In this document: one piece after another, positions 45,163 through 61,738 of the stretch | Numbering within the stretch: position 1 is the stretch's first letter | Layout of the letters: the number at the start of each line of letters is the position of its first letter | Virus record (IMG/VR): IMGVR_UViG_3300045999_008996 | Coordinates: 1-64,000 of that record | DNA: 64,000 nucleotides | Strand: one strand, 5' to 3' | Notes under the pieces: model-generated | Databases searched by the model: none | Seen by the model: the letters and a program-made list of their open reading frames with translations, nothing else | Told to the model about the DNA's origin: nothing | Position numbers and translations under genes: made by a program

Positions 45163-45462
45163 TTAGAAGTCGAACACATTGATGTTGATTTCCTGGATAT
45201 TGACCATGGGGTCAGCATACTTAACACCATCAGGAGTTGCCACAATACCCTCATCATTCAGTGCGTCGATAGTGTCAACATAGTTGCCCATATCGCGGCA
45301 GAGGTAATAGAGATTGACGTCATTCTGCAACCACAGTGCAACATTCCAGGTCTCATAATTTGCCCAACCGTTATAGGTGGTGTCGGTCAGATTTGCTTGA
45401 AAAGTAGCAGTCATTGGTAAGTCTTGAGTGTTAGCGGGGCGGTGAACTTGTGTGCCCCTCAT
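45163..45462 (-). CDS. Hypothetical protein (YNGWANYETWNVALW family)
   Basis: Starts at the ATG of repeat copy 1; second Met at residue 17. Confidence 0.75.
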   Translation of the reverse strand: MRGTQVHRPANTQDLPMTATFQANLTDTTYNGWANYETWNVALWLQNDVNLYYLCRDMGNYVDTIDALNDEGIVATPDGVKYADPMVNIQEININVFDF

Positions 45463-45492
45463 ACTACTAAGACACTTTCAAGGTGAGTAACT

Positions 45493-45915
45493 TTAATGGA
45501 TGCGGTCCTGAATATCATTGAGGACCGTAGATAAGACTTCCACACTATCCTCACCGTTCTCTTCTAACTGTTGCATAACGTCTTGCAGTTGGGGTAGAAT
45601 AGCAGTGGTAATCTGTGGCACTCTGATAATACTCATTTCGCCCAGATGCTTATACTTTAGAGGTCTTCCTCCAGCAATAGTTTTGGGACGAAACTTACTG
45701 TCTTTTTTAGACTTTTCAATGTGGCATTTGTTACATAAAAGTTGGCACTTTGATAACTCTTCTAACAGAACTTCCTTAGGTTTACTATAACCTGCAGCAA
45801 TATTGAATGACTTTGTAGAAGGGTCAATATGGTCAAACTCTAATGCTTCTGTGCAACCACATTCTACACACTTTCCACCCAACTTTTCAATTAGAATTTC
45901 CCTTAATAAGTTCAT
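45493..45915 (-). CDS. HNH endonuclease with C-terminal extension
   Basis: CVECG...FDHIDP...CQLLCNKCH; late promoter TATAAATA 45943-45950. Confidence 0.85.
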   Translation of the reverse strand: MNLLREILIEKLGGKCVECGCTEALEFDHIDPSTKSFNIAAGYSKPKEVLLEELSKCQLLCNKCHIEKSKKDSKFRPKTIAGGRPLKYKHLGEMSIIRVPQITTAILPQLQDVMQQLEENGEDSVEVLSTVLNDIQDRIH

Positions 45916-46013
45916 AGGTATTTTGATAACTTAATACGTCGTTATTTATAGGTTTTTTGAGGTATTACGTTATCAAAACTTAAACGCCTTATTTGGTATA
46001 AATTGCTACCAAA

Positions 46014-46187
46014 TTACCATCTATCGGGTGTACTTAGGTCTTCTACGTAAGCATCACACTTCTCTGCAGGTTCCAACTTGAAGAGTTTCTCCCAGTCAAT
46101 TTGATGTGGGTCGAAGTCAGGAAACGCAGAGATATCTAGAGTGATGCGATAACGAACCTTCTGTGCCTGAGTGTATGCTACTGACAT
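46014..46187 (-). CDS. Hypothetical protein, 57 aa
   Basis: MSVAYTQAQKVRYRITLDISAFPDFDPHQIDWEKLFKLEPAEKCDAYVEDLSTPDRW; GGAG and promoter upstream. Confidence 0.7.
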   Translation of the reverse strand: MSVAYTQAQKVRYRITLDISAFPDFDPHQIDWEKLFKLEPAEKCDAYVEDLSTPDRW

Positions 46188-46214
46188 AAGTGCGCTCCTG
46201 TGTGTTATGAAGGT

Positions 46215-46243
46215 ACTATAAGATGCCTGGGCGAAAATGTCAA
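46215..46243 (-). promoter_or_regulatory. Sigma70 promoter
   Basis: TTGACA-N17-TATAGT. Confidence 0.8.
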
Positions 46244-46314
46244 TGGTCTGGGGGTATTTAGGCGGTCCTGGTGGATTTAAGCAGGGGAATTGTGAGGATT
46301 TTGTGACCCTGTGG

Positions 46315-46344
46315 TTGACAAAAGTGCTGTTCTTATGTTATGCT
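46315..46344 (+). promoter_or_regulatory. Plus-strand sigma70 promoter facing non-coding AT-rich DNA
   Basis: TTGACA-N18-TATGCT with extended -10 TG. Confidence 0.6.
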
Positions 46345-46570
46345 CGGTAAGAAGACAAGACCTCGACACGTTTATAATGTATCAGCACACATTCTCTGGC
46401 ACATTATAAGATAATAGAGACGATTAAAGGCACTTAATTGATACGAATTCATATCATTATCACACATTAATAACAATAATTATCAGGCATTTAATTCGAA
46501 CGTTTATATTTAAATTGATATTTTTAATTGATTTTATTGTTTTTTTAACGTTATTTTGGCATAAAAGCAT

Positions 46571-46597
46571 AAAAAAAGAGGGTAGAAGTACCCTCTC
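46571..46597 (-). terminator. Rho-independent terminator
   Basis: AGAGGGTA/TACCCTCT stem with U-tract on minus strand. Confidence 0.8.
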
Positions 46598-46606
46598 TAT
46601 CTTATA

Positions 46607-46843
46607 TCAATCAATCGCTAATCTGTACCTTGCATAATCCTCTGCATCAGATCTTTTACGGAATCGTGCTTCTTCTCCTTCAAATCTAAGAGGCAAATAC
46701 CTATACTTCTTGCCTTCCTTAGTCATTACAATTCGGGAGAATAGATGCAGTGAGTAACTACCATCCTCCGTTCTTTGTGCTTCTTTCTTTACAATGAAAG
46801 GCAGAACTTGTTGGTCGTTGAATGAGGACTTAGAGAGTAACAT
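46607..46843 (-). CDS. Hypothetical protein
   Basis: 78 aa ORF. Confidence 0.65.
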   Translation of the reverse strand: MLLSKSSFNDQQVLPFIVKKEAQRTEDGSYSLHLFSRIVMTKEGKKYRYLPLRFEGEEARFRKRSDAEDYARYRLAID

Positions 46844-46866
46844 TTCGATTTAAGAGTGTAGGATTA

Positions 46867-47058
46867 TCAGGAGAATCGTGATGCAAACTTAAGTGCATCT
46901 TTTTCTTTTGTATAAGTCTTGAACTCTTTAGTCACCCAGTAAGCATCACCTCGCAGAGTGTTTTCTTTGAACACATCAACCTGAACTGAGAACTTGTTAT
47001 TATACTCTCTGATGTAAACTCTGGTATCACCAATCTTTGGACGTTCCATGGTTTGCAT
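46867..47058 (-). CDS. Hypothetical protein
   Basis: 63 aa ORF. Confidence 0.6.
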   Translation of the reverse strand: MQTMERPKIGDTRVYIREYNNKFSVQVDVFKENTLRGDAYWVTKEFKTYTKEKDALKFASRFS

Positions 47059-47074
47059 ATTCTTTTGCTTGGTT

Positions 47075-47263
47075 TTAATTGGTGATCAATTCAGCAGGAC
47101 TACCACACGATTTGTAGAACTCAATCATACGATTTGCTTCCTCTAGTGTAGAGAACGTTTGCGTCCTCCATTGTTGTTGATAAGGTGTAAAGTAACGGAT
47201 TTTGAACATTTTGTTTGATTCAGTTAGAGTGAAGAATGGTGAGCATCTTCTGGTAATACTCAT
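47075..47263 (-). CDS. Hypothetical protein (real start probably MFKIRYF)
   Basis: WRTQTFSTLEEANRMIEFYKSCGSPA. Confidence 0.6.
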   Translation of the reverse strand: MSITRRCSPFFTLTESNKMFKIRYFTPYQQQWRTQTFSTLEEANRMIEFYKSCGSPAELITN

Positions 47264-47387
47264 CTGCTTCTACTTCACATTGATGAGACTGTGTTGCATC
47301 TTCAATCTCGTATTGTTTCATACTCAGAGAGTGAATTACGCTGTCTAGAAGATTAGTCAGTGCTTCAATCTTTTGTTCGTTAGTCAT
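47220..47387 (-). CDS. Hypothetical protein, 55 aa
   Basis: MTNEQKIEALTNLLDSVIHSL...; TGATG coupling. Confidence 0.6.
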   Translation of the reverse strand: MTNEQKIEALTNLLDSVIHSLSMKQYEIEDATQSHQCEVEADEYYQKMLTILHSN

Positions 47388-47725
47388 CAGTTAAGCACCA
47401 TACCTTCAGTGAAAGGAATTGTGTTACCGTTATCAATCACAAACCATTCAAAATCACGTTGAAAGATACGGGCATCATTTCCGTGCTCTTTCAGAATAGC
47501 ATTGAGACGTGATTTGGTTGTTGGAGTTTTATACCCACAGGTGTAAAGTTCAAGGAAGGTATCACCAATCGTTGCGATATGATTGCCATGCAGATAAACA
47601 TATGAAGCATCACGTTCGGGCGAATAGAGAACTTCAGTGTTGTCAGACTTCCAGTCTTTGCAGTTGGTAATAGCATTGTTCATTTTGGATTCAATAACTC
47701 GCATGGTTGGAGATTCAGTGGTCAT
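47387..47725 (-). CDS. Hypothetical phage protein
   Basis: VYLHGNHIA, TPTTKSRLNAIL; starts at repeat ATG. Confidence 0.8.
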   Translation of the reverse strand: MTTESPTMRVIESKMNNAITNCKDWKSDNTEVLYSPERDASYVYLHGNHIATIGDTFLELYTCGYKTPTTKSRLNAILKEHGNDARIFQRDFEWFVIDNGNTIPFTEGMVLN

Positions 47726-47766
47726 ACTACTAGGACACTTTCAAGGTGAGTAACTTTAATTGCGAC

Positions 47767-47973
47767 TTACAGAGAAAATACTTTAGATGTCACAAGTTGG
47801 GAATCTTGATCATACTTTTCATAAGACCAAGTACCTTCGGTTTGTTCAACATAAGAGTGAACATTGTCGTTACAATCTTCCTTCCAAAAGGCACCAGTTT
47901 CGGGTTGGAAGAAATAACCAGATGCGATAAGTGCGTCAGTGAATGTCATTGTGATTTCAGCGTTAAGTAACAA
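47767..47973 (-). CDS. Hypothetical protein
   Basis: 68 aa ORF. Confidence 0.55.
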   Translation of the reverse strand: MLLNAEITMTFTDALIASGYFFQPETGAFWKEDCNDNVHSYVEQTEGTWSYEKYDQDSQLVTSKVFSL

Positions 47974-47976
47974 TAA

Positions 47977-48186
47977 TCAGGCAGCGATTGCAGACTCTAG
48001 ACATACCTCACGGGTTTCGAGTAGAACATAATCACACTCAGATTCCAGTTCCTTCAGGTAGGCATTGGCAGCAGAGAAACAATCAAACAAGCGGAGAGAT
48101 CTGAAGTTCTCACCTTCATAATCAAATCCACCGATAACAGCGTAGACAGACATTTTGGACATTTGAGACATTTGGGAAGTGGTCAT
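47977..48186 (-). CDS. Hypothetical protein
   Basis: VYAVIGGFDYEGE; starts at repeat ATG. Confidence 0.7.
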   Translation of the reverse strand: MTTSQMSQMSKMSVYAVIGGFDYEGENFRSLRLFDCFSAANAYLKELESECDYVLLETREVCLESAIAA

Positions 48187-48216
48187 ACTACTAGGACACT
48201 TTCAAGGTGAGTAACT

Positions 48217-48357
48217 TTAATTGGTCGTCACATATGGTCCTTGAACATCACAAAACTCTAGAAGAAAGTAATCAATAGTGACGCCAAGTTCATTTGCAAA
48301 CTGTAGATTTTCTTGATATTGTTCCTGAGAAAGAATGTAGAAATCAGTCTCAATCAT
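48217..48357 (-). CDS. Hypothetical protein, 46 aa
   Basis: MIETDFYILSQEQYQENLQFANELGVTIDYFLLEFCDVQGPYVTTN; TAA lies in repeat copy 3. Confidence 0.6.
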   Translation of the reverse strand: MIETDFYILSQEQYQENLQFANELGVTIDYFLLEFCDVQGPYVTTN

Positions 48358-48644
48358 GGTCGATTTGTCCTCCTTGAAGTTCAACATTGTCTAGTACAGT
48401 AACAATCTGCTGGTTTGGAGTAAGGTAGTCGATTTGCAGAACATTCGGCGCGATTTCAGTTGCTCCGATAATCGTAGATGCTAACAGGATTTCAATCATT
48501 GTTGCGGTGAGATAATGTCTGCTACAGTGTGCAATGTATTGGAAGTGATGTTGCGAACTCCAGGTGAGAGTATCATCGCAACAATGAAGATTAGTGTAAA
48601 TGTCTTCACTTTACAAGGAGACTTAAATGTAAGACTTTTTGCCA

Positions 48645-48878
48645 TCAGTTAATGACATCATACTTCAGGGATTTGACACACCAACCCGTGTTGTCAGAGA
48701 TACAATCGACAAGATCTTCCTCACTCGGAGGTGCCCAAAGGCAAGATTTTGCATCATCTACGATCTCTTTCTTCTCATACTCAGTGAGATCTTCATAGTC
48801 GAAATCGAACTCAATTTCAGTGATTTTGTAGTAGTTCATACTTTTAGTGTTAGTCAGGGTTTCAGTGGAAGTGGTCAT
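48645..48878 (-). CDS. Hypothetical protein
   Basis: ITEIEFDF...ISDNTGWCVKSL; starts at repeat ATG. Confidence 0.7.
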   Translation of the reverse strand: MTTSTETLTNTKSMNYYKITEIEFDFDYEDLTEYEKKEIVDDAKSCLWAPPSEEDLVDCISDNTGWCVKSLKYDVIN

Positions 48879-48908
48879 ACTACTAGGACACTTTGGAGGT
48901 GAGTAACT

Positions 48909-49118
48909 TTAATTGAACTCGATGTTCCAGTCAACATCTGCAGTAAGATTGACCCAAAAGTGATTCTTACCGTTTGCAGAGGTTAGAAACACTTTGTTTC
49001 CGTGATGTTGCTCCACAATACATTCATTATTGCGGTTCATTAAGTTACAGAAACGATTCTGTGCTTTCTTACTCTTGGGTGTCACAAATGCAGTCATCAT
49101 ATTCAGGTTGTTGTCCAT
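48909..49118 (-). CDS. Hypothetical protein
   Basis: Start codon and stop codon both supplied by flanking repeats. Confidence 0.75.
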   Translation of the reverse strand: MDNNLNMMTAFVTPKSKKAQNRFCNLMNRNNECIVEQHHGNKVFLTSANGKNHFWVNLTADVDWNIEFN

Positions 49119-49165
49119 ACTACTAGGACACTTTAGAGGTGAGTAACTTTAATTGACGTAGAGTT

Positions 49166-49522
49166 TCAGTTACGCATCAGGGCAAGTGCATCATTCTCAC
49201 TGATGCTATCCTCAGGCAGTTGGATATTGCGAGCACAGGCAACTGCATCAGCAAAATTATCAAAAGTGCCAAAGGATTTCTGATTACCACACCAGCAACC
49301 TTTGTACTCATAAAACATTGCTTCGACTGAGAATACATCACCTTTTGTTTTAGAATCTACACTGTGCTTGATGTACACTTTACCGTCATATCGGGTGTAC
49401 TTATCAAACATATTGCTCTTGAAAGTACGAATGAAATCAGCGATAGACTCAGCAGTCAGATTGATATTCTGAGAGAACAGATTTGCGTAATGAACTGTCA
49501 TTTTAGTGGTTTCAGTGGTCAT
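49166..49522 (-). CDS. Hypothetical protein
   Basis: 118 aa; starts at repeat ATG. Confidence 0.7.
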   Translation of the reverse strand: MTTETTKMTVHYANLFSQNINLTAESIADFIRTFKSNMFDKYTRYDGKVYIKHSVDSKTKGDVFSVEAMFYEYKGCWCGNQKSFGTFDNFADAVACARNIQLPEDSISENDALALMRN

Positions 49523-49557
49523 ACTACTAGGACACTTTGGAGGTGAGTAACTTTAAT

Positions 49558-50175: not shown

Positions 50176-50346
50176 TCAGTCAACAACAGAGTAACAAGCA
50201 ACCCAGGAAGGAATCCCAGAGAGTGATAACGAACCATTGCGAGCATCGCAATAGTCTTCTGCCTCTTTTTCAGAGTAGAAAGGTCCAATGTACTCTGGAG
50301 AATCGAGTGCTTCAGACCAAAATCGAACGGTAAAAGTGTTTCTCAT
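50176..50346 (-). CDS. Hypothetical protein, 56 aa
   Basis: MRNTFTVRFWSEALDSPEYIGPFYSEKEAEDYC...; its only Met is the repeat ATG. Confidence 0.7.
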   Translation of the reverse strand: MRNTFTVRFWSEALDSPEYIGPFYSEKEAEDYCDARNGSLSLSGIPSWVACYSVVD

Positions 50347-50380
50347 ACTACTAGGACACTTTAGAGGTGAGTAACTTTAA

Positions 50381-50524
50381 TTACTTGAAAGTTCCATTGA
50401 CACCAACAACCTTTGCAGTAGGATTGCGTGCTTGTGCAGTTTCGCGGGCATCTTTTGGAGAGTTAGCATACACTTCCTCCTTGAAGACTTTACCGCCAAC
50501 GTATAACTCAACAATGTACTTCAT
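50381..50524 (-). CDS. Hypothetical protein, 47 aa
   Basis: MKYIVELYVGGKVFKEEVYANSPKDARETAQARNPTAKVVGVNGTFK. Confidence 0.7.
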   Translation of the reverse strand: MKYIVELYVGGKVFKEEVYANSPKDARETAQARNPTAKVVGVNGTFK

Positions 50525-50885: not shown

Positions 50886-51133
50886 CAATAGTGTGCTTCA
50901 GAAGTGTCAAGAACTTCGCTGTACTTAGCGATACCATCATAGCAACGCTTTGCCATTTCAGAATCACCCTCAGCGACATAACCTTTCAGAAACTCGAAGC
51001 AGTATTTGATACGCAGTTCGGGTGCAACTGCAGCGAGTTGTTGTTGACGACGCTCGTAAGCGGCGTTGTATGCAAACATTTCACGATCTTCGAGAGAGAT
51101 GTTGTGAAACTTGCGGTCGGTAGTGTTGTTCAT
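50885..51133 (-). CDS. Hypothetical protein
   Basis: 82 aa; starts at repeat ATG. Confidence 0.7.
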   Translation of the reverse strand: MNNTTDRKFHNISLEDREMFAYNAAYERRQQQLAAVAPELRIKYCFEFLKGYVAEGDSEMAKRCYDGIAKYSEVLDTSEAHY

Positions 51134-51174
51134 ACTACTAGGACACTTTGGAGGTGAGTAACTTTAATTACCCG

Positions 51175-51599: not shown

Positions 51600-52027
51600 T
51601 TTGCGTACAGATAACCACCCGACCAGTCTGCATTTTCCAGCAGATATTCACGATCTTTGATCAATCGAAGGTCATAACGAACACCTTTCGCAGGAGATTT
51701 CCAAGTGGCAGACTTATACACTTCACCAGTGTTCTTGTCAATGAAGCAATGAACACTGCGCGAACCACCACCATTCACCAGAATGACTTTGTGATACTTT
51801 TTACCAGTCTCAATGGTATAGTCAATATCACACTTGCCAGACTTGAGTTCATCAACCTTGCGAAGGTGATACTCTACACCTTCACCACGTTCTGCGGAAC
51901 GCTGATGACCACGAATAGAATACTGACGATAGTTGTCTTTCAGTGCTTCAATCAGCAGCAGAGTGTTCTTATACACATTCTCTGCGATGGTTTGTTGTGC
52001 TTGTGCTTGCATTGTAGGAGTGCTCAT
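51596..52027 (-). CDS. Hypothetical phage protein
   Basis: GKKYHKV...SVHCFIDKNTGEVYKSATWKSPAKGVRY. Confidence 0.8.
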   Translation of the reverse strand: MSTPTMQAQAQQTIAENVYKNTLLLIEALKDNYRQYSIRGHQRSAERGEGVEYHLRKVDELKSGKCDIDYTIETGKKYHKVILVNGGGSRSVHCFIDKNTGEVYKSATWKSPAKGVRYDLRLIKDREYLLENADWSGGYLYAK

Positions 52028-52062
52028 ACTACTAGGACACTTTGGGGGTGAGTAACTTTAAT

Positions 52063-52980
52063 TCAACCCCAATTCTTCACCATTGTAAAGTTGGCATGAG
52101 AGAATGTTTCGCGGTCCACTACTTTGTAAGATCCAAACTTGTTATGAATGACATAACCTTCGTGGAAACTTGACACTCCCCAGAGATAACATTCAATCTC
52201 ATCTTCTTCATGAATGAACAGGAACAAATCGTCTTTGATAGACTTCACCAGTTTCCACAATCTGATGAGGTTCTTGTCACAATCACATTTTTCTGCAATT
52301 TCATCTTCATCCACGTCTCTTTCCTCACGGATGCAGGCATTGATCTCTTTTTTGATTTGTGATGCTTTACGGTCGCTCACAAACTCACATAGAGTGCTCA
52401 TTTGTTTAGCAAACTTACACACATCCTCCAAATCTTCACGATAAGGATTCAGGGACACCGCAGGTTGCACAAACAAGCATTGTTTGGTGCTTGCAAACTT
52501 GCTGGTGATAGGGTGTGCTACCATCTCAGGCAGTCGGTCCCCAGTGTAGTAAGTGTGAGGACAAATAACAATCTCCTGACGCACAATCTCAGGGAACTTA
52601 TAGGTAATAGTATTGGGTTTGAAAGTATCCAACCCACTACCAAAACCAATAAAATCACCCTGATACACTTTCTTAGTGCGAGGCAGGAAATCCAGACAGA
52701 AGATGAGGATTTGTGTTACGTTTGGTTGATGCCCAAAGTGCAGAAAGATGTCATCTTCGGTGTAACACAGGCGAATCTTTTGCTTGTTAAATGCTGCTTT
52801 GGTGCAGACAAAAAACTTACCATTCTCAGGATTAGTGCCCCACACAATAGCAGGAGCACCATCCATCTTTACGCTGATAGTAGAATCAGCGGAGAACCAA
52901 TCAAGAACCGAAAGATCACCATTAAGGATGCTATCTTCGGGGTGTTCAATGTGTTTGTTCTGCATTGGTTGCTTGCTCAT
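52063..52980 (-). CDS. DUF6267-like protein with ligase/nucleotidyltransferase KxDG motif
   Basis: NKHIEHPED, SVKMDGAPAIVWG, YQGD, HEGYV, KVVDRETFS. Confidence 0.7.
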   Translation of the reverse strand: MSKQPMQNKHIEHPEDSILNGDLSVLDWFSADSTISVKMDGAPAIVWGTNPENGKFFVCTKAAFNKQKIRLCYTEDDIFLHFGHQPNVTQILIFCLDFLPRTKKVYQGDFIGFGSGLDTFKPNTITYKFPEIVRQEIVICPHTYYTGDRLPEMVAHPITSKFASTKQCLFVQPAVSLNPYREDLEDVCKFAKQMSTLCEFVSDRKASQIKKEINACIREERDVDEDEIAEKCDCDKNLIRLWKLVKSIKDDLFLFIHEEDEIECYLWGVSSFHEGYVIHNKFGSYKVVDRETFSHANFTMVKNWG

Positions 52981-53019
52981 ACTACTGGGACACTTTGGAG
53001 GTGAGTAACTTTAATTAAG

Positions 53020-53241
53020 TCAAACTTGAACCAGTTTTTGTAGGCGATTGCGAATGTCAAAGATCTCCATATCATCCATATCTACAGAGTCAAGATCTAC
53101 AGGAGCAAACTCCTCAAGATTTACACTTCCATCGGCATAGATAGGTGCATAATACAACTCATCGCCATCTTCTTGCGAGAGAGTGTAAACGCAACCGTGA
53201 CCAGGAACAGTGAGAAAAATCATTGGAGTTTTTAAGAACAA
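53020..53241 (-). CDS. Hypothetical protein
   Basis: 73 aa ORF. Confidence 0.6.
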   Translation of the reverse strand: MFLKTPMIFLTVPGHGCVYTLSQEDGDELYYAPIYADGSVNLEEFAPVDLDSVDMDDMEIFDIRNRLQKLVQV

Positions 53242-53291
53242 AGGTACAATGAGGGAGCACTCATAGAAAGTAGTGCTCCTGTGCCAATTTA

Positions 53292-53549
53292 TCAGGCAGT
53301 GACTCGCTTACGAGTTTTAGTAACAGCAGCAGGTTGCTCCACTACATCAACAGGAGAAAGTTGTGCTTTACCAAACTCAATCAGCGTATCAACAAATTTC
53401 AGAAACTGAAGAGTTGCAACACGAACTTTCTCACGCCCATCATTCTCATTGAATGAACGAATGAAGAACTGAACCACACCAACAACAATGGCAGCGATGG
53501 TAGCGATGTTCTTCACGAGGGTGTCAACAAACGTCCAGTAAAAAGTCAT
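53292..53549 (-). CDS. Putative membrane protein
   Basis: N-terminal hydrophobic helix IATIAAIVVGVVQFFI. Confidence 0.65.
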   Translation of the reverse strand: MTFYWTFVDTLVKNIATIAAIVVGVVQFFIRSFNENDGREKVRVATLQFLKFVDTLIEFGKAQLSPVDVVEQPAAVTKTRKRVTA

Positions 53550-53617
53550 AATTTGGGTTAGAAACTTCAGTGAGGAACGACCCTCACACTACTAGGACAC
53601 TTTAGAGGTGAGTAACT

Positions 53618-53797
53618 TTAATTCACGGGAAGTTTTGCCATTGACACACCTTTTTTATGGTCAGTGATATACTTTCTGGCAGAACTTTCAGTCCTACAAA
53701 GTTTCTCAAGTTGCTGACCATTGTGAATGATAAGATACTGGTTGCCGTAGGGAATGGCAGCGTATTCATCACGAAACATTGTAAATCCTTCTTTCAT
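53618..53797 (-). CDS. Hypothetical protein, 59 aa
   Basis: MKEGFTMFRDEYAAIPYGNQYLIIHNGQQL...; TAA lies in repeat copy 11. Confidence 0.65.
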   Translation of the reverse strand: MKEGFTMFRDEYAAIPYGNQYLIIHNGQQLEKLCRTESSARKYITDHKKGVSMAKLPVN

Positions 53798-54437: not shown

Positions 54438-55682
54438 TCACCGCCGCACCACACTGATAGCAGGTTCTCCCTTCTGGAAGATAGTATCAACAACCGACTG
54501 CACAGCGCGAGCGGTGCTGATACCAACCTTGCTGTAGACAGGAATGCAAACAAGACCGAACGATTTGCTATATTGTGCCAGGTTGCCAGGTTCGATACGT
54601 CCATCACGCAAACCTTTGGCATCATCGTGATGCAAACGGATGCAACGTCCGATGGTCTGACTGATACCAATGAAGTCCATATTACGCAGGAACAACACTG
54701 CTTCCAAACCACTCACATTGATACCCTCAGCGAGGATGCTGTGGTGTAGAACAACGAACTTCTTATCGTTATCCTTACCCCAGGCAGATAGGGTATCAAA
54801 GAATACCTCGCGGTTGACCTTGCGTCCATCAATAACTGCACCAGTCTTAGCAGTAATATACATCCAAGAGAAACCACGTTCCTCTAGTTCAGCACAGAAA
54901 TCAGTTTCCGACACCAGCGAAACGATTTGCTTGGTTGCCTTAGAACAAATTAGAATCTTACCGACTTTGTTCTCATCAATCGTTTCCAGCAGATTCTCTG
55001 CATCTCGGTCAAAGTTAGTCTGCTTGCCAGTTACCATAGGGAGTTGCTTGACGATAACTTTAGGAGGCACAATATAACCACCCTCAACCAACTCAGGAGC
55101 AGGAACTTTGCAGATTACCTGACCATAAACAGCAGCATCATTCATCCCAGGTTTGCCAGTGGCAAGGGAATGTTTAGGAGTTGCAGTAAAGAAGTAGCAG
55201 CGACGTGCGTTAGCAGCAAAGTGCTCAGTTGCAGGGAAAAAGTGACGCTGAACACTGTTATGTGCTTCATCAAAGTAAATTGTATCCACATCAACTTCTG
55301 CCACTTGAAGACGCGACAGAGAGTTGTAGGTGGTTACAATCAGGCGATGATTGTCAGCATTTGCATTAACCCAGTTGCGAATCTCACGCGGGCGAGTAGA
55401 AGATTCGTGATGAGTTTCACCACTGTGAATATGAAAAACTTTTGCGTTGGTGATAAACTCCATAAACTCAGCGGAGAGTTGCTCTGCCAGGAGAATACGA
55501 GGGGCAACAACAACAATCGTCTGTGGAGTTTCAGACTGCAACTCACGCAGACAATCATAGATCATCTTGAGAGTCTTACCACCACCAGTAGGAACAATAA
55601 TTTGACCCTTATTATGCTTCGCCATAGCAGCAACACCACGTTCTTGGTGCGGACGGAGTTGGATTTGCATTGGTATCATCAT
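54438..55682 (-). CDS. SF2 DEAH helicase (restriction-subunit-like)
   Basis: LRPHQ, PTGGGKT, YFDEAH, FTATP, LAEGINV, QTIGRCIR motifs. Confidence 0.9.
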   Translation of the reverse strand: MMIPMQIQLRPHQERGVAAMAKHNKGQIIVPTGGGKTLKMIYDCLRELQSETPQTIVVVAPRILLAEQLSAEFMEFITNAKVFHIHSGETHHESSTRPREIRNWVNANADNHRLIVTTYNSLSRLQVAEVDVDTIYFDEAHNSVQRHFFPATEHFAANARRCYFFTATPKHSLATGKPGMNDAAVYGQVICKVPAPELVEGGYIVPPKVIVKQLPMVTGKQTNFDRDAENLLETIDENKVGKILICSKATKQIVSLVSETDFCAELEERGFSWMYITAKTGAVIDGRKVNREVFFDTLSAWGKDNDKKFVVLHHSILAEGINVSGLEAVLFLRNMDFIGISQTIGRCIRLHHDDAKGLRDGRIEPGNLAQYSKSFGLVCIPVYSKVGISTARAVQSVVDTIFQKGEPAISVVRR

Positions 55683-55714
55683 CTAGTATTAGAGCACTTT
55701 GGAGGTGAGTAACT

Positions 55715-55954
55715 TTAATTCGCGGTCTGTTTATATACCTTCAGTTTATCAATCACACCTTGCATTGTAGCACGATTGTATCCATTCGCAAAGGATGGAC
55801 TTCTCTCAGTTTCGGGATTAGAACTGAAATCAACATTCTTAGCGACATTAACACCCTCTTGAAGAAGGCGAATGACATCATCAAAGACAAAATCAGGGAT
55901 TTGGATGTAATTCATTGTTCTCAGTGGTTTGATAAGTAAAGACAAAAATAGCAC
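55715..55954 (-). CDS. Hypothetical protein (start probably MNYIQ)
   Basis: TAA lies in repeat copy 12. Confidence 0.6.
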   Translation of the reverse strand: MLFLSLLIKPLRTMNYIQIPDFVFDDVIRLLQEGVNVAKNVDFSSNPETERSPSFANGYNRATMQGVIDKLKVYKQTAN

Positions 55955-55991
55955 GCTTAGAGGTCAATCTGAGCGTGCTGGTAGGGTTTAA

Positions 55992-56147: not shown

Positions 56148-56207
56148 TGCGTGAGTGTTGTGCTTACACTACTAGGACACTTTGGAGGTGAGTAACTTTA
56201 ATTGGAG

Positions 56208-56885: not shown

Positions 56886-56914
56886 TGGTCTATCTAAACA
56901 CTACTTTTTAGTAT

Positions 56915-57604: not shown

Positions 57605-57679
57605 TTATATTTATATAATAAGAGGGACATTTCTGCCCCTTTTCATTTGCTTTTAGATGCGACTCTTAAGCACTAATAT

Positions 57680-57889
57680 TTAGTCTTCATCTTTAAGTTT
57701 ATCTTGGGCGGATTTGCTTACTTTACAAACTCTGTCGGTTGCATAAAATTGTTTCACACGTTCGCGACGAGTAGCAAGAAGCAAATCATACTCTTCTTGC
57801 TGTTGCTTACTAAAAGTGAAATCCTGTCGCCTCCAAGTCTCTTTCAGTTCTTTGATGTAAGGAAGCACGTTAGGGATGTGTTCAGTCAT
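57680..57889 (-). CDS. Hypothetical protein
   Basis: 69 aa; GACAGTTT/AAACTGTC palindrome upstream (57933-57950). Confidence 0.7.
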   Translation of the reverse strand: MTEHIPNVLPYIKELKETWRRQDFTFSKQQQEEYDLLLATRRERVKQFYATDRVCKVSKSAQDKLKDED

Positions 57890-57948
57890 TGAGTATATTA
57901 AAGGATGAGGGGTCAGTGTGGAGAGTTTAGTGGACAGTTTAGAAACTG

Positions 57949-58083
57949 TCAGTAGTCAATGTTAGACTTAAGATATTCATTCATATTAAAATCATCTTGT
58001 TCTTCAATCAATTCAACAAGATCTTTTTCATTAAAGTCAAATCCAGCGATTTCTTCAATTTGAATGTCGTCGAAGCAGTCCAT
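57949..58083 (-). CDS. Small acidic protein, 44 aa
   Basis: MDCFDDIQIEEIAGFDFNEKDLVELIEEQDDFNMNEYLKSNIDY; after repeat copy 14. Confidence 0.6.
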   Translation of the reverse strand: MDCFDDIQIEEIAGFDFNEKDLVELIEEQDDFNMNEYLKSNIDY

Positions 58084-58131
58084 AACTTGTTTGTTGCTTA
58101 CATTACTAGGACACTTTAGAGGTGAGTAACT

Positions 58132-58713
58132 TTAATTGCGACTCATAATTGCTCTCATTTCTCTTCTTTTTTGTGCCTGCTGAGCACTTGCTTCGTGCTC
58201 CATTTCTCTCTGAGCATGTGCTTCTCTTGCTCTTTTTCTTGATAACTGACTTTTTGCAATCAATTTATTATAATAATTGGGTTCCATTGTAGGAGTTTGC
58301 TCAGTCTGCAATTCTCTCTTAATTTCCGATTTTAATGCTTCTCTTTCTCTTTGTGCAGATAATCTTTCTTTCTGTCTTGATTGATAATCGGAAACCTTTT
58401 GTTTTTGTGCTACCATTTGTTTCTTTTGTCTCTGACGAAGTTCTTGTCTTCGCTGTTGCAAATCTTCTGTGATTTTATTAACTGATTTTGCTAACTTTTT
58501 CAATCTCTTTGTTACTGCTTTTCCACCACTACGCTTTACAACTAACTTATCAATTTCTTTCTTTTTTGGTTTACCCAGTGGACCATCATAACTCTGGAGA
58601 GTATAAGAAATATTACCTTCACTATCTTTCTTATAAGTTCCAGGAACTGCATGTGGGGGAGTATCAGGTTTCTTACCTTCGCAGATTTGATAGAACTCTC
58701 TAAATGTCAGCAT
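58132..58713 (-). CDS. Basic putative internal head protein
   Basis: MLTFREFYQICE N-terminus; AATAAATA 58733-58740; TAA in repeat copy 14. Confidence 0.65.
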   Translation of the reverse strand: MLTFREFYQICEGKKPDTPPHAVPGTYKKDSEGNISYTLQSYDGPLGKPKKKEIDKLVVKRSGGKAVTKRLKKLAKSVNKITEDLQQRRQELRQRQKKQMVAQKQKVSDYQSRQKERLSAQREREALKSEIKRELQTEQTPTMEPNYYNKLIAKSQLSRKRAREAHAQREMEHEASAQQAQKRREMRAIMSRN

Positions 58714-58741
58714 TTTAATTATACTTTTTGATTATTTATTT

Positions 58742-59032
58742 CTACTCAAATTCAAGTGCTCTATTTGATACTTTCATAGGTGGAGTTTGATATTCAGGAA
58801 GTGTAGAAGTTTCAACATATACTTCAATCTTAGTCTCTTTGTCCCAATGCCGAATTGCATTGGCGATGATGAAACAGTTAGTAATAAAAATACTCAAAAA
58901 CATCAAAAGGCGGATAAGTGCTACCTTATCCGCTTCTTTATCACATTTACTTGCTTTTTCTCCAAGTGCCTTAGCAAGCAACCGCCAGACAGTTTTGTTC
59001 TTCCTCATAGATTGATTCTCTTGATTTAACAT
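58742..59032 (-). CDS. Putative membrane protein
   Basis: WRLLAKALGEKA...ADKVALIR + hydrophobic helix + IANAIRHW. Confidence 0.65.
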   Translation of the reverse strand: MLNQENQSMRKNKTVWRLLAKALGEKASKCDKEADKVALIRLLMFLSIFITNCFIIANAIRHWDKETKIEVYVETSTLPEYQTPPMKVSNRALEFE

Positions 59033-59234
59033 ACTTTAAGTGTTTCCAATCTTCTTTGTAACAAACTACAAGCAATCTTTCATTCTTATGAATAGGACAA
59101 CATTCATAGTTTTCTTCATCTTTAGGGCGGACAATGTACTCAATGGTTATGTACTCATCTCCCTTAAAATAAACCCAACCTTCAACACCTTTTGTCCATT
59201 CAACATAATCATTGACTTGTGGTTTGTATGTCAT
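58971..59234 (-). CDS. Hypothetical protein
   Basis: YKPQVNDYVEW...EGWVYF...YITIE. Confidence 0.7.
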   Translation of the reverse strand: MTYKPQVNDYVEWTKGVEGWVYFKGDEYITIEYIVRPKDEENYECCPIHKNERLLVVCYKEDWKHLKYVKSRESIYEEEQNCLAVAC

Positions 59235-59611
59235 ACAAAGAACGCATCTAATGGAGACTGCTTGATAGGCATTGTAGTATAGTTTCGCGTGTCGTTGATA
59301 TTTACACGAGCACCGATGGACTTACTATTGATGGGGAAGAAATACTCTCTGGTTTTGGTATTGTAGAAGGAGTGTATAGTTCTGGTCGGAGCACCATTAT
59401 TATAGACAAACTTGCGAGTGTTGCATAACCAAATACTGACAACATTTCGCTTGAACTCTTCACACTCATAATAGTATCCTTCGGGAGCAGAATAAGGAAG
59501 TGGGGGAACTTCAACAGTCATAGAATTTGTCACGCGACATATACTCAATTTGCTTCTGCAGTTGTGAGATTTCGTGTTCTTGTTCTGCAATTTTACTTTG
59601 CAGTTGTTCAA
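59231..59611 (-). CDS. Hypothetical protein (start probably MTVEV)
   Basis: APEGYYYE...FKRNVVSIWL...TRNYTTM. Confidence 0.65.
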   Translation of the reverse strand: MNNCKVKLQNKNTKSHNCRSKLSICRVTNSMTVEVPPLPYSAPEGYYYECEEFKRNVVSIWLCNTRKFVYNNGAPTRTIHSFYNTKTREYFFPINSKSIGARVNINDTRNYTTMPIKQSPLDAFFV

Positions 59612-59680
59612 TACGTTCTTGATACTGTGTCTTCAAATCAAAAACCATTTTATTGGTGTGAGCAACGTGGTGAGTCATAA

Positions 59681-59923
59681 TCAGGTTGTAAAAGATTCAA
59701 CTACTGCAGATTCTACATCCTCAGCAAGAGCATAAGTCCTTGCGCTTAACACATTTTCACGAAGAGTGGTGTAATACTGTTCATAGAAGTTGTCATCATC
59801 TTCTGCAGCAATCAAATCAAAACATTCATTGTCGTTTTCCGCAATCACATTCCAAAGTCCACCATATTCACTGGAAGGAAAAGGAATGTAGTGGTCAACC
59901 AGATAAAGAAACTTTTGTGCCAT
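59681..59923 (-). CDS. Hypothetical protein
   Basis: VDHYIPFPSSEYGGLWNVIA. Confidence 0.75.
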   Translation of the reverse strand: MAQKFLYLVDHYIPFPSSEYGGLWNVIAENDNECFDLIAAEDDDNFYEQYYTTLRENVLSARTYALAEDVESAVVESFTT

Positions 59924-59946
59924 TTGTGTTTGAAAATTACTCCTTT

Positions 59947-59975
59947 AGTATAGGTTTAAGATTGCAGTTTGTCAA
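59947..59975 (-). promoter_or_regulatory. Sigma70 promoter
   Basis: TTGACA-N17-TATACT followed by AAGGAG. Confidence 0.8.
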
Positions 59976-60236
59976 TAAAACTCTGCAAGATAATAGTCTA
60001 CAGTAACCTCCATTTTTGCCGCTTCGCGTTCAACTTCTTTCCAGAACTCTTCTGCTACTTTGTCCATTTCTGCTTGTTTGATAAGGTCGCGGAGTCGTTT
60101 CGGAATCATTTTAGTTGTTGAGTTGCTTGTTGACGATAGTATGATTTATAAAGAGCATCATCACGCTGGATTAGAAAGACATTCCAACCAAGAATGACTG
60201 CAAGACTAATCAATCCAGCGACAATGTGCTTTTTGT

Positions 60237-60428
60237 TCATTTAGAAGAAACTCCTGTGGGTTTGAAGATAAGATTAGCAAGAGCAATGATGGCAAAGTTC
60301 TGCCAGAAGGTCAAAGATACATTGAACCAAGACAGAATAAGTCCAAGCAACCACGCCTCAAAGAATAGACTTGCTGTTACAAGAACAACAGCAATAAAAA
60401 GAACGCCAAAAGCGGTAGTAGTTTTCAT
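60237..60428 (-). CDS. Small membrane protein
   Basis: Almost entirely hydrophobic 63 aa. Confidence 0.65.
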   Translation of the reverse strand: MKTTTAFGVLFIAVVLVTASLFFEAWLLGLILSWFNVSLTFWQNFAIIALANLIFKPTGVSSK

Positions 60429-60431
60429 AGG

Positions 60432-60872
60432 TCAAACAGCAAGGGCAGCAGAGGGGATTTCAACGATTTCGGGAAGTTTGTTATCATCAAACTGGTGCAT
60501 ATTATAGCACACCCATTCACCATTGCGGAAGACATAGTGGAACTCTTCTGCTCCATCAGGCAGCAGATACTCACATAGTTCAGCATCAAGACGAGGAGGG
60601 CAATCTTCACCGCGCTGAGAGTAGTATTGAGGACCGTATTTTTGAGGTCCAACTCCTTTCACGCCAGGAATAATTTCTTCATTAGTCCAACATTCTTCGG
60701 ACCAGCAGGAACTCATATCTCCACCATCAATCAGTTCAGAAACTTTCTCTTTGGTATTGTAGTGCGTTTTCAGAATACGACCCAACCATTCAGGATAACC
60801 ATCCCAGTGGTGATAGGCAGAGAGAACAGAACCGTCAGAGAGTTCAATACCGATGCGAGAGCGGGTTGACAT
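60432..60872 (-). CDS. Hypothetical phage protein
   Basis: MSTRSRIGI...YHHWDGYPEWLG...LIDGGDMS. Confidence 0.8.
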   Translation of the reverse strand: MSTRSRIGIELSDGSVLSAYHHWDGYPEWLGRILKTHYNTKEKVSELIDGGDMSSCWSEECWTNEEIIPGVKGVGPQKYGPQYYSQRGEDCPPRLDAELCEYLLPDGAEEFHYVFRNGEWVCYNMHQFDDNKLPEIVEIPSAALAV

Positions 60873-60919
60873 TTGAGTGTTGTGCTTACATTACTAGGAC
60901 ACTTTGGAGGTGAGTAACT

Positions 60920-61738
60920 TTAATAGACTGCAATCAGTTCACTTGCTTTCTTCCTACTGCCACCTTTTGCAGCAATCGTTCTTGTTACTTGAATCGGATA
61001 GATTGTAGCATTTTTATAGAGTTCTCTTGTGATAGGAACATCATGATTTGATACAATCACTTTAATATCTTTTGCAGCAAGAGATTCTGCAAGTTGTGCT
61101 AATTGTTCTTGTTGAACATCAGTGAATCCATCGGTTGCATAATTTGTGAAGTTTGCAGTATCTGATGCAGGAACATACGGTGGGTCAAAGTAGACAACAT
61201 CACCTGCTTCCAAATCTTCATAAAGAGATAAATCTTCAAAAGAAAGTGATGTGAACCTCACCAGTTGTTTGGATAGGAAATACATCCTGAAGTTCATCAT
61301 CTCTTCGGAAGGGCAAGATGGTTTGTCATACTTACCAAAGGGAACATTAAATCCACCTTTGCTATTATATCGCGACAAACCATTGAAACAATGACGATTC
61401 AAGTAAATGAACAGTCGTGCCCTCTCTGTAGTGTCTATTGCTTGATTAAAGTGCTCTCGCAACTCTAAATATGCTTCTTTGGTATTATTCTCTGGAGTGA
61501 ATAGTTCTTCGCAATATTGAATGAAACTATCATCATTTGGATTTACCAAATTCTGATAGATTGATACCAAATCTTTATTCACATCATTGAGAATATATTG
61601 CTGTGCTGGTGTATTCAATGCAACAGCAAGACTACCACCAAAGGGTTCACAATAACGCTTTGGATAACCAATATGGGGAATAAGATGGGGCAGGACCCGA
61701 TATTTGTTTCCCGCCCACTTTAACGGTGGTTTGTTCAT
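60920..61738 (-). CDS. dam: DNA adenine methyltransferase (D12/Dam family)
   Basis: LKWAGNK, EPFGGS, RYNSKGGFNVPFG, YFDPPY motifs. Confidence 0.93.
   Translation of the reverse strand: MNKPPLKWAGNKYRVLPHLIPHIGYPKRYCEPFGGSLAVALNTPAQQYILNDVNKDLVSIYQNLVNPNDDSFIQYCEELFTPENNTKEAYLELREHFNQAIDTTERARLFIYLNRHCFNGLSRYNSKGGFNVPFGKYDKPSCPSEEMMNFRMYFLSKQLVRFTSLSFEDLSLYEDLEAGDVVYFDPPYVPASDTANFTNYATDGFTDVQQEQLAQLAESLAAKDIKVIVSNHDVPITRELYKNATIYPIQVTRTIAAKGGSRKKASELIAVY

What the first reader, a model, noticed from the sequence alone, without database searches (positions are those of the whole stretch)
45460..60924. Cassette-like array of early genes delimited by 15 copies of a 39-bp direct repeat
Seen: 15 same-orientation copies of minus-strand AATTAAAGTTACTCACC-nnn-AAAGTG(TCCTAGTAGTATG), 240-2788 bp apart, each at a gene junction, and none noticed in 1-45 kb. 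The 16-mer GGTGAGTAACTTTAAT (plus) and CACTTT are invariant, and the unit contains AAAGT twice, 16 nt apart. The upstream gene's stop is the repeat's own TAA in 7 copies (1,3,4,11,12,14,15), overlaps its edge in 3 (6,7,9), and lies within about 12 nt in the other 5. There is no TTGACA, although ordinary sigma70 and late promoters occur nearby. Established analogue: repeated early promoter stem-loop (PeSL) cassettes that shuffle modules in T4-type phages; this motif lacks a strong stem-loop. Inference: a dedicated early promoter class that also serves as a recombination joint for gaining, losing or reordering small host-takeover genes.
Basis: partly seen in the sequence, partly recalled or inferred. 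Interest (0 to 1): 0.88.

Follow-up and report, generated by a model that had tools for sequence, protein, structure and literature searches.

The report
Repeated promoter-like element heading cyanophage gene cassettes
A 43-base element repeated 15 times in a marine cyanophage most likely acts as the promoter and short leader of each small pre-late gene unit, and it also marks where such units have been swapped between related phages; it is a new sequence type of a kind of element already known in T4-like phages.

Summary
There are 15 exact, same-strand copies of the 16-mer (0.04 expected), only between 45.5 and 60.9 kb, each at a gene junction on the minus strand. The window comes from a T4-like cyanomyovirus, and the array lies in its small-ORF region upstream of the baseplate genes.

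The unit is about 43 nt: ATTAAAGTTACTCACC-TCn-AAAGTGTCC-TAG-TAGTRT-RAsCA. A G-poor, Shine-Dalgarno-less leader follows, with a start codon at a fixed distance. It forms no RNA structure, matches no Rfam family and has no sigma-70 -35 box. It is absent from host genomes.

The same 16-mer occurs in at least 120 uncultured viral contigs. Variant forms occur in the isolates P-TIM68 and SynMITS9220M01. Syn9, P-TIM40, S-PM2 and others carry a different repeated element in the same region.

The element stays with its downstream gene (95% of junctions) and its upstream gene (85%), while the partner across it changes. One 607-bp cassette indel has its crossover inside the element. Gene turnover is almost as frequent at junctions that lack the element.

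Verdict: a lineage-specific pre-late promoter/leader element that also serves as a substrate for homologous recombination. Its function resembles PeSL cassettes, but it is not a member of that family. The transcription start and the "early" timing remain untested.

The parts
45456..45497 (-). Element copy 1; heads ORF 45163-45462. The upstream ORF 45493-45915 stops in the element's TAA.
   Evidence: 55.5 bits
47719..47760 (-). Element copy 2; heads ORF 47387-47725 (Kyano_Gp96 family; the family N-terminus aligns to the second in-frame ATG).
48180..48221 (-). Element copy 3; heads ORF 47977-48186. The upstream ORF stops in the element's TAA.
48872..48913 (-). Element copy 4; heads ORF 48645-48878. 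The upstream ORF stops in the element's TAA.
49112..49153 (-). Element copy 5; heads ORF 48909-49118.
49516..49557 (-). Element copy 6; heads ORF 49166-49522. The upstream stop codon (TGA) abuts the element.
50340..50381 (-). Element copy 7; heads ORF 50176-50346. The upstream stop codon overlaps the element's first base.
51127..51168 (-). Element copy 8; heads ORF 50885-51133.
52021..52062 (-). Element copy 9; heads ORF 51596-52027 (DUF7717). The upstream stop codon abuts the element.
52974..53015 (-). Element copy 10; heads ORF 52063-52980 (DUF6267). The ATG at element positions 36-38 is kept in most relatives.
53581..53622 (-). Element copy 11; heads ORF 53292-53549, whose start lies 58 nt after the core, with a small hairpin in between. 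The upstream ORF stops in the element's TAA.
55678..55719 (-). Element copy 12, the most divergent 3' half; heads the helicase ORF 54438-55682.
   Evidence: 47.3 bits
56161..56202 (-). Element copy 13 (GTA at positions 36-38); leader GTAAGCACAACACTCA, then ORF 55992-56147.
58095..58136 (-). Element copy 14; the ATG-TAA at positions 36-41 is not a gene start. Heads ORF 57949-58083.
60883..60924 (-). Element copy 15; heads ORF 60432-60872. The Dam-type methyltransferase ORF 60920-61738 stops in the element's TAA.
53016..53622 (-). Example cassette: copy 11 plus ORFs 53292-53549 and 53020-53241, 607 bp. It is absent from contigs such as L061, where a single hybrid element joins the flanking genes.
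45456..60924 (-). The whole array: 15 elements heading 15 units of 1-10 small ORFs, about 47 ORFs in all, mostly of unknown function.

Best explanation
Each repeat is a roughly 43-bp cis-regulatory element. It sits at the head of a small transcription unit in the pre-late, hyperplastic small-ORF region of a T4-like cyanomyovirus. Most likely it is a phage-specific promoter with a built-in short leader. It provides a -10-like box, TAGTRT, at element positions 32-37, and two invariant upstream blocks where a -35 box would be: GTTAsTyACC and AAAkTG. It places the start codon either inside the element (ATG at position 36) or 15-23 nt further on, behind a G-poor, CA-rich leader without a Shine-Dalgarno sequence. 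Transcription would start either at the purine at position 36, which gives leaderless mRNA when 36-38 is ATG, or at about positions 42-45. The sequence alone cannot decide between these. The polymerase would be the host enzyme. The non-sigma-70 upstream half, and the fact that all copies in one genome share the same variant of the central part, suggest an extra specificity factor (inference). The copies are 40-45 bp of near-identical DNA in direct orientation between genes. They are therefore also substrates for ordinary homologous recombination, which has added, removed, replaced and moved the units they bound. That role is a consequence of the repeats, not a dedicated recombination system.
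For: Shown: 15 exact copies on one strand, all at gene heads, confined to 45.5-60.9 kb. In 304 unique instances from at least 120 viral contigs, conservation spans positions 0-42 and then stops. T32, A33 and T37 are 92%, 89% and 95% conserved, T35 is 97%, and position 36 is a purine in 99%. TAnnnT at 32-37 is the only such hexamer shared by the three lineages that carry the family: this window, SynMITS9220M01 and P-TIM68. When positions 36-38 are not ATG, the real start lies at positions 50-59 in 69% of cases; the leader is 72% A+C and 10% G, and an SD-like 4-mer occurs in 2 of 156. When they are ATG, that ATG is in the coding frame in 90-94% of cases. There is no RNA structure, no Rfam match and no sigma-70 call at any copy. 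The late motif NATAAATA is concentrated before structural genes (15 of its 18 minus-strand copies lie in 1-45 kb) and never lies in the repeats. Homologues of genes headed by the element carry it in 73% of other contigs, against 2% for other genes (p = 2e-9). In 230 of 243 junctions elsewhere (95%), the downstream gene is one that is also element-headed here. The pattern is essentially absent from 185,579 bacterial and archaeal species genomes: one hit, about 4 expected by chance. Recombination: both flanks keep the element while the partner across it changes. Alternative cassettes occupy the same slot, and units are translocated. In L061 a hybrid element has the 5' variable sites of copy 11 and the 3' site of copy 10. 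Copies within a genome are more alike at positions 17-42 than copies between genomes (0.83 versus 0.68), with no such effect in the flanks.
Against: No transcription start or timing data exist for this phage, so both the promoter function and the "early" label are inferences. The -35 region matches TTGACA at only 2-3 of 6 positions. If TAGTRT is the -10 box, the frequently used ATG at position 36 would lie upstream of the start site and could be translated only from read-through transcripts. If the start is at position 36, there is no recognisable -10 box at the usual distance. The fixed distance to the start codon, the in-frame ATG and the upstream stop codon inside the element would also suit an RNA-level translation or processing signal. 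Gene adjacency is broken almost as often where no element is present, so the element is not needed for gene turnover. The only published early element for T4-like cyanophages (Doron et al. 2016) could not be read here. The genomes it studied carry a different repeated sequence in the syntenic region.
Confidence: 0.6

Rival explanations
1. RNA-level signal. The element is transcribed within long polycistronic early mRNAs. There it acts as a translation-initiation or reinitiation region, as an operator for a translational repressor of the RegA type, or as an endonuclease processing site that frees each downstream cistron.
For: The start codon lies at a fixed distance (positions 36 or 50-59). ATG36 is in frame in 90-94% of cases. 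The upstream gene's stop lies in or next to the element in 183 of 287 instances. There are no terminators between units and no sigma-70 -35 box. GTG at position 36 is rare (6 instances) while ATG is common (136).
Against: There is no conserved RNA fold and no SD or anti-SD logic: the triplet after CACC varies and SD-like 4-mers are absent. The strongest conservation lies 20-35 nt upstream of any start codon. In some copies the start codon is 58-115 nt away, which an initiation-region operator would not tolerate. The TAnnnT box and Y35-R36 are features of promoters.
Confidence: 0.2
2. Promoter for a non-host or heavily re-specified polymerase, in the style of T7-like single-subunit enzymes or a virion-delivered specificity factor. 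This would explain the long invariant block and a start at position 36 or about position 20.
For: A 16-nt block is identical in every copy collected, although the search itself required it; the conserved span is 43 nt and lacks sigma-70 boxes. The central part of the element is genome-specific across all copies, as expected if a phage-encoded factor reads it. The pattern is essentially absent from host genomes.
Against: T4-like cyanophages are not known to encode their own RNA polymerase (my own knowledge), and none was seen among the window ORFs examined. Only 64 kb of about 222 kb could be read. Genome-specific variants can also arise by gene conversion between copies.
Confidence: 0.1
3. Dedicated site-specific recombination site, comparable to integron attC sites, used by a specific recombinase to capture and excise gene cassettes.
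For: The array looks like cassettes. Alternative cassettes occupy one slot, and junctions fall inside the element.
Against: There is no inverted-repeat or hairpin architecture. No integrase or recombinase was found among the ORFs of the array that were scanned. Turnover is nearly as frequent at junctions without the element. The element stays attached to particular downstream genes like a promoter. All copies point the same way as the genes.
Confidence: 0.04
4. Operator for a repressor that shuts off this gene class, or another DNA-binding protein site, without promoter activity of its own.
For: Long invariant blocks and genome-specific variants.
Against: There is no room for a separate promoter. 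The upstream gene ends in or next to the element in 64% of instances, and the flank upstream is not conserved apart from a weak AAnTT. The element has no dyad symmetry.
Confidence: 0.06

Closest known systems
PeSL (promoter-early stem-loop) mobile regulatory cassettes of T4-type phages (Arbiol et al. 2010, PMC2839356; Comeau et al. 2014, PMC4122927)
   Same: Many near-identical copies in one orientation lie between small genes of hyperplastic regions. They sit at the borders of insertions, deletions and replacements between related phages. They combine a regulatory role with a role as recombination substrate.
   Different: PeSLs are defined by sigma-70-type boxes (TTGACA or TTTACW, N17, TATAAT-like) plus a stem-loop. 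This element has neither. The PeSL papers do not treat cyanophages. True PeSL-like hairpin-plus-TTGACA elements do exist elsewhere in this window (62788-62755 and 44711-44673).
The "novel regulatory element" of early genes in T4-like cyanophages Syn9 and P-TIM40 (Doron et al. 2016, ISME J 10:1437; recalled from its abstract, paper not held)
   Same: Same virus group and same syntenic small-ORF region containing the helicase and methyltransferase. Both are long, conserved, non-sigma-70 elements in front of many small genes, followed by a short CA-rich or AAGG leader.
   Different: The weight matrix of this element finds nothing in 100 kb of Syn9 or 32 kb of P-TIM40. Those genomes, and ACG-2014f, S-SKS1 and S-PM2, repeat a different sequence: a palindrome TGTGACA...TGTCACA or GTGCCAC...GTGGCAC, then CACTACCG, then a TATAAT-like box. 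I could not confirm that this is the published motif.
T4 early promoters
   Same: A class of phage promoters conserved well beyond the two hexamers. They drive small host-takeover genes immediately after infection.
   Different: T4 early promoters keep clear sigma-70 -35 and -10 boxes (my own knowledge). Here only a TAnnnT box is recognisable.
Promoters of T7-like single-subunit RNA polymerases
   Same: About 20 bp of near-invariant sequence repeated in front of genes, with an AT-rich 5' part (compare the T3 promoter AATTAACCCTCACTAAAG, from my own knowledge).
   Different: No such polymerase is known in this virus group and none was seen in the window. The resemblance to the T3 promoter is partial and out of register.
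Integron attC sites
   Same: Repeats that bound single-gene or few-gene cassettes in an array.
   Different: attC sites are imperfect palindromes that fold and are cut by an integrase. This element has no symmetry, no fold and no nearby integrase, and it points with the genes like a promoter.

Membership tests
PeSL cassettes (T4-type phages) | Sigma-70-type early promoter boxes (-35 TTGACA-like, 17-nt spacer, -10 TATAAT-like) | tested here: not met
   None of the 15 copies is among the 59 sigma-70-like sites. The best -35 candidates, TTACTC and TACTCA, match 2-3 of 6 positions. Only TAGTAT fits a -10 box.
PeSL cassettes (T4-type phages) | Stem-loop (terminator-like) joined to the promoter | tested here: not met
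   Folds of 8 copies with flanks give z-scores of -0.31 to +1.38 and no shared helix. No terminator-like site overlaps a copy.
PeSL cassettes (T4-type phages) | Many conserved copies, one orientation, intergenic, in a hyperplastic region | tested here: met
   15 copies on the minus strand at gene junctions. Gene adjacency in this region is conserved in only 19-29% of comparisons.
PeSL cassettes (T4-type phages) | Borders of indels or replacements between relatives fall at the repeats | tested here: met
   Slot variants and translocations. A hybrid element at a 607-bp indel. 26 of 43 novel gene pairs join two element-adjacent genes. Borders are not exclusive to the repeats: adjacency is broken at 79-81% of element junctions against 71-73% of junctions without it.
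PeSL cassettes (T4-type phages) | Excised circles or recombinant junctions detectable by PCR | not testable with these tools
   Needs phage DNA or reads.
Early regulatory element of T4-like cyanophages (Doron et al. 2016) | Lies directly upstream of mapped start sites of early-class transcripts | not testable with these tools
   No transcript data. The paper is not held.
Early regulatory element of T4-like cyanophages (Doron et al. 2016) | Sequence shared with the element of Syn9 and P-TIM40 | tested here: not met
   The weight matrix gives 0 hits in Syn9 (100 kb) and P-TIM40 (32 kb). Those genomes repeat another sequence. The published logo itself was not seen.
Early regulatory element of T4-like cyanophages (Doron et al. 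2016) | Position in the small-ORF cluster with helicase and methyltransferase, next to the baseplate genes | tested here: met
Host primary-sigma (sigma-70 family) promoter | -10 box TAnnnT about 7 nt upstream of a purine start | tested here: inconclusive
   TAGTRT at 32-37 is conserved (92%, 89% and 95% at the key positions) and is followed by CA at 41-42. However, the ATG at position 36 inside the box is used as a start codon in about half of the instances.
T4-type late promoter | TATAAATA or NATAAATA at -10 | tested here: not met
   None of the 18 minus-strand NATAAATA sites lies in a repeat.
T7-like single-subunit polymerase promoter | A cognate phage RNA polymerase gene | tested here: inconclusive
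   None among the ORFs scanned, but only 64 of about 222 kb is available.
Integron attC | Imperfect inverted repeats that fold, with an integrase next to the array | tested here: not met
   No fold. No integrase hit among the array ORFs scanned.

The most novel reading that the evidence does not exclude
The element defines a second, undescribed transcription-initiation signal of marine T4-like cyanophages, read by host polymerase only together with a phage-supplied (possibly virion-delivered) specificity factor. Transcription would start at position 36, so that half of the units are expressed as leaderless mRNAs. All copies in a genome would co-evolve with that factor.
Probability: 0.2. Interest if true: 0.75.

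Novelty: new variant of a known kind. Interest (0 to 1): 0.5.

Why it matters
T4-like cyanophages are among the most abundant viruses of the ocean's main primary producers, yet how they launch their first genes without the T4 middle-mode machinery is poorly understood. This element gives a precise, searchable tag for one class of their pre-late transcription units. It is found in hundreds of uncultured contigs and in two cultured phages, so the question can be tested in the laboratory. It shows that different cyanophage lineages use different long, non-sigma-70 elements in the same genome region. It also extends to cyanophages the idea that repeated regulatory elements double as joints for swapping small accessory genes. 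In practice, the element marks the true heads of units and corrects start-codon calls for many tiny ORFs.

Tried and rejected
1. Full-text searches for parts of the sequence returned only unrelated hits, such as 16S primers.
2. Doron et al. 2016 could not be opened by DOI or PMC id. Citing papers and reviews do not give the motif, and no supplement was held.
3. Sullivan et al. 2010 searched only for known promoter types.
4. BLAST of the 38-mer against phage isolates is too insensitive; it found only SynMITS9220M01 and S-B05. Fetching syntenic regions and scanning them with a weight matrix worked instead.
5. I considered that the CACCTCC stretch mimics the 16S rRNA 3' end. I rejected this because the triplet after CACC varies (TCC, TCT, TTG, CCC).
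6. I considered NtcA, CRP, Pho-box, sigma-28, sigma-54 and ECF-type consensus sequences (from memory). None fits in register.
7. I considered that AAGTGTCC, also present upstream of two Syn9 genes, links the two element types. The spacing to the -10-like box differs by about 25-30 nt, so I left this open and did not use it.
8. The single bacterial-genome hit, in a Flavobacteriales MAG, has no phage homologues and no -10 part, so I treated it as chance.
9. Rfam gave only one sub-threshold, unrelated hit.
10. I could not decide between the two start-site models from sequence alone.

Full report
**1. The observation**

The plus-strand 16-mer GGTGAGTAACTTTAAT occurs 15 times without mismatch between 45482 and 60924. 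No further site appears when up to two mismatches are allowed, and 0.04 matches are expected by chance. The repeat finder recovers the same 15 sites with 25-66 nt of similarity and spacings of 240-2788 bp. A 42-nt weight matrix built from other contigs scores these 15 sites at 47-64 bits and finds nothing else above 18 bits in the 64 kb. All genes of the window run on the minus strand, so I describe the element on that strand. Position 1 is the A of ATTAAAGTTACTCACC.

**2. The genome**

- Positions 1-42 kb encode the T4-type head, neck, tail and baseplate genes: scaffold, portal, sheath, large terminase, gp13/14/15-like and wedge proteins.
- The nearest isolates are Synechococcus myoviruses at only about 76% nucleotide identity (S-SCSM1, Bellamy, S-SM2, SynMITS9220M01).
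- Locus L018 matches window 53684-64000 at 100%, so the window comes from the 222,563-bp contig IMGVR_UViG_3300045999_008996.
- The array lies in the small-ORF region that contains a DEAD-type helicase, DUF6267 and a Dam-type methyltransferase. This region is syntenic with Syn9 gp55-gp93.
- Most of the roughly 47 ORFs in the array have no known function.

**3. Anatomy from many genomes**

These give 304 unique instances.

- Conservation runs from position 0 to position 42: a-ATTAAAGTTACTCACC-T(c/t)n-AAAGTG-nCC-(TAG or CTA)-TAGT(A/G)T-(A/G)A(G/C)CA.
- A stretch of about 35 nt follows that is poor in G and rich in A and C.
- Upstream of the element there is only a weak AAnTT at -11 to -7.
- T32, A33 and T37 (a TAnnnT pattern) are 92%, 89% and 95% conserved. 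T35 is 97% conserved, and position 36 is a purine in 99%.
- The "ATG" at positions 36-38 is not a fixed part. The triplet is ATG in 47%, GTA in 30% and ATA in 12% of instances.

**4. Relation to the coding sequence**

- When positions 36-38 are ATG, that triplet is in the coding frame in 122-128 of 136 instances. When they are GTA or ATA, the frames are scattered.
- When they are not ATG, the first start codon opening a long ORF lies at positions 50-59 in 108 of 156 instances. The leader is 37% A, 35% C and 10% G. SD-like 4-mers occur in 2 of 156.
- Among instances with ATG at 36, 59% have a second in-frame ATG at codons 5-10, with a peak at codon 6. Control windows further into the gene show 15% and 4%.
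- The Pfam family Kyano_Gp96 and several PHROG profiles begin at that second ATG.
- The upstream gene ends in the element's TAA in 103 of 287 instances and within two bases of its edge in 80 more.

The canonical layout is therefore: element, short SD-less leader, start codon at about +15 to +23 from position 36. An optional in-frame ATG lies inside the element and is conserved for some genes (DUF6267) but not others (Kyano_Gp96).

**5. What it is not**

- No copy is called as a sigma-70 promoter.
- No copy contains the T4-type late motif. NATAAATA occurs 18 times on the minus strand: 15 in 1-45 kb, several of them directly upstream of structural ORFs, and 3 in the array region before other genes.
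- RNA folds of eight copies with flanks are no more stable than shuffles (z from -0.31 to +1.38) and share no helix.
- Rfam gives nothing.
- A 19-base version of the pattern occurs once in 185,579 bacterial and archaeal species genomes, in a Flavobacteriales MAG, without the 3' half of the element and without phage genes. About four chance hits were expected. The element is therefore phage-specific and does not copy a repeated host sequence.

**6. Relatives among cultured phages**

- SynMITS9220M01 has 12 copies of a variant, nnTAAT(G/A)TTACTCACC-TCT-AAAGTGTyC-CTA-TAGTRT, in its small-ORF region.
- Prochlorococcus phage P-TIM68 has at least 8 copies of CTAAATGTTAGTTACC-TCT-AAATTGA-nTTAT-TAATGT-AATCAAGGAAT, aligned in register with this element.
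- The family consensus is nTnAAnGTTAsTyACC-yCy-AAAkTG-N6-TAnTRT-RA. The only TAnnnT hexamer common to all three lineages is at positions 32-37.
- Syn9, P-TIM40, ACG-2014f, S-SKS1 and S-PM2 have no match. In the same region they repeat another element: a palindrome (TGTGACA...TGTCACA or GTGCCAC...GTGGCAC), then CACTACCG, then a TATAAT-like box and a short leader.
- From memory of its abstract, Doron et al. (2016) reported a novel regulatory element for the early genes of Syn9 and P-TIM40. I could not read the paper, so equating that element with the palindrome-type repeat is my inference.
- Sullivan et al. (2010) searched cyanomyovirus genomes only for known promoter types. The PeSL papers do not treat cyanophages.

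**7. Test of the cassette idea**

I compared 58 window ORFs with 118 other loci by tblastn.

- Gene adjacency is poorly conserved everywhere in this region: 19-21% at the 15 junctions with the element and 27-29% at the 42 junctions without it. The element is therefore not required for gene turnover.
- The element is tied to particular genes. Homologues of genes headed by it carry it upstream in 73% of cases, against 2% for other genes (p = 2e-9). Homologues of genes followed by it keep it downstream in 69% of cases, against 6% (p = 9e-9).
- Of 476 unique element junctions in other contigs, the downstream gene is element-headed in the window in 230 of 243 recognisable cases (95%). The upstream gene is element-followed in 183 of 216 (85%).
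- 43 junctions join a gene pair that is not adjacent in the window. In 26 of these, both partners are element-adjacent in the window; g23-M-g26 alone occurs 9 times.
- Gene-order strings show a collinear backbone. Alternative units bounded by the element occupy the same slot: between g23 and g26 there is nothing, or g24-g25, or an unrelated unit of about 300, 355, 1057 or 1437 bp, or a unit carrying the methyltransferase.
- Units are also translocated. The helicase unit lies after the DUF6267 unit in L032, L039 and L114.
- In L061 the single element between g23 and g26 carries the 5' variable sites of window copy 11 and the 3' site of copy 10. This places the crossover of this 607-bp indel inside the element.

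**8. Concerted variation**

At positions 17-42, copies within one contig are 83% identical against 68% between contigs. The leader and the upstream flank show no such difference. Positions 26-31 are the same in all copies of a genome, whatever the flanking genes. Positions 36-42 follow the downstream gene. Two explanations fit: gene conversion among copies, or co-evolution with a genome-specific reader. I cannot separate them.

**9. Mechanism**

The best reading is a promoter with a built-in leader for pre-late transcription units. Its repeats are also used, as a side effect, by homologous recombination. Two start-site models remain.

- Model A: TAGTRT is the -10 box and transcription starts at about positions 42-45, near the conserved CA at 41-42. 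This fits a host primary-sigma enzyme and mirrors the box-to-ATG spacing in Syn9 (17 nt). In this model the ATG at position 36 can be translated only from read-through transcripts.
- Model B: transcription starts at the purine at position 36, after the 97% conserved T35. This gives leaderless mRNAs when 36-38 is ATG. It explains the in-frame rule and the near-absence of GTG at position 36, and the conserved span then runs from -35 to +7. It leaves no recognisable -10 box and implies unusual recognition.

I rate the two models about equal.

The label "early" is inferred from synteny, from the small unknown ORFs and from the absence of late motifs. It is not shown.

**10. Verdict**

The element works like a PeSL cassette border but fails the two sequence features that define PeSLs. 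It also differs in sequence from the repeated element of Syn9 and P-TIM40. I class it as a new variant of a known kind. It is widespread in uncultured cyanomyoviruses and can be tested in two cultured phages.

Noticed in passing
window 62788-62755 (-) and 44711-44673 (-); also 46598-46575 (-): These are true PeSL-like composite elements. A GC-rich hairpin carries TTGACA or TTGACG in its loop, followed by a T-run and TATGCT(ATAAT). The site at 62782-62755 is a perfect TTGACA-16-TATAAT with TG. This phage therefore has hairpin-plus-sigma-70 promoters as a separate class from the 43-mer.
   Followed up: partly
window 56915-57604 (-): This 229-aa ORF matches a gene of phage S-SRM01 annotated "nuclease associated modular domain 3 protein" at 81% nucleotide identity. 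It is missing between its neighbours in almost all relatives (adjacency 0/46 and 1/45). A late-type TATAAATA lies at 57615. It looks like a free-standing homing-endonuclease-type insertion. A second tblastn match to this ORF lies beyond the window end in L018.
   Followed up: partly
window 45493-45915 (-): This 140-aa ORF has a weak HNH endonuclease match (E = 7e-4, below the Pfam cut-off). It is preceded by TATAAATA at 45950 rather than by the 43-mer.
   Followed up: no
window 44781-44880 and 45013-45112: A 100-nt direct repeat at 88% identity covers two adjacent 45-46-aa ORFs, a tandem duplication of a tiny gene just downstream of the array. Pfam gives no hit.
   Followed up: partly
window 14000-42000 versus 42000-62000: G+C steps from about 29-35% in the fibre and baseplate genes to 38-44% in the small-ORF array.
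   Followed up: no
window 27618-39614 (-) and 20525-26041 (-): Two giant ORFs of 3998 aa and 1838 aa lie in the baseplate/fibre module.
   Followed up: no
L128 (P-TIM40) 19700-25500; L125 (ACG-2014f) 1000-6800; L121/L122 (Syn9) 46300-51300: These cyanomyoviruses repeat a different element in the syntenic region: a palindrome TGTGACA..TGTCACA or GTGCCAC..GTGGCAC, then CACTACCG, a TATAAT-like box and a short CA/AAGG leader. Early-region elements come in at least two sequence types that follow phage lineage.
   Followed up: partly
window 53587-53570 (-): Directly after copy 11 the sequence GTGAGGGTCGTTCCTCAC can form a 6-bp hairpin. This is the only copy in the window whose start codon lies far (58 nt) from the element.
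   Followed up: no
window 56152-56202 and 60874-60924: Copies 13 and 15 share the leader as well (51 nt at 98%: ...TAGTRRTGTAAGCACAACACTCA). For a subfamily, the repeated unit therefore extends about 15 nt beyond the core element.
   Followed up: partly
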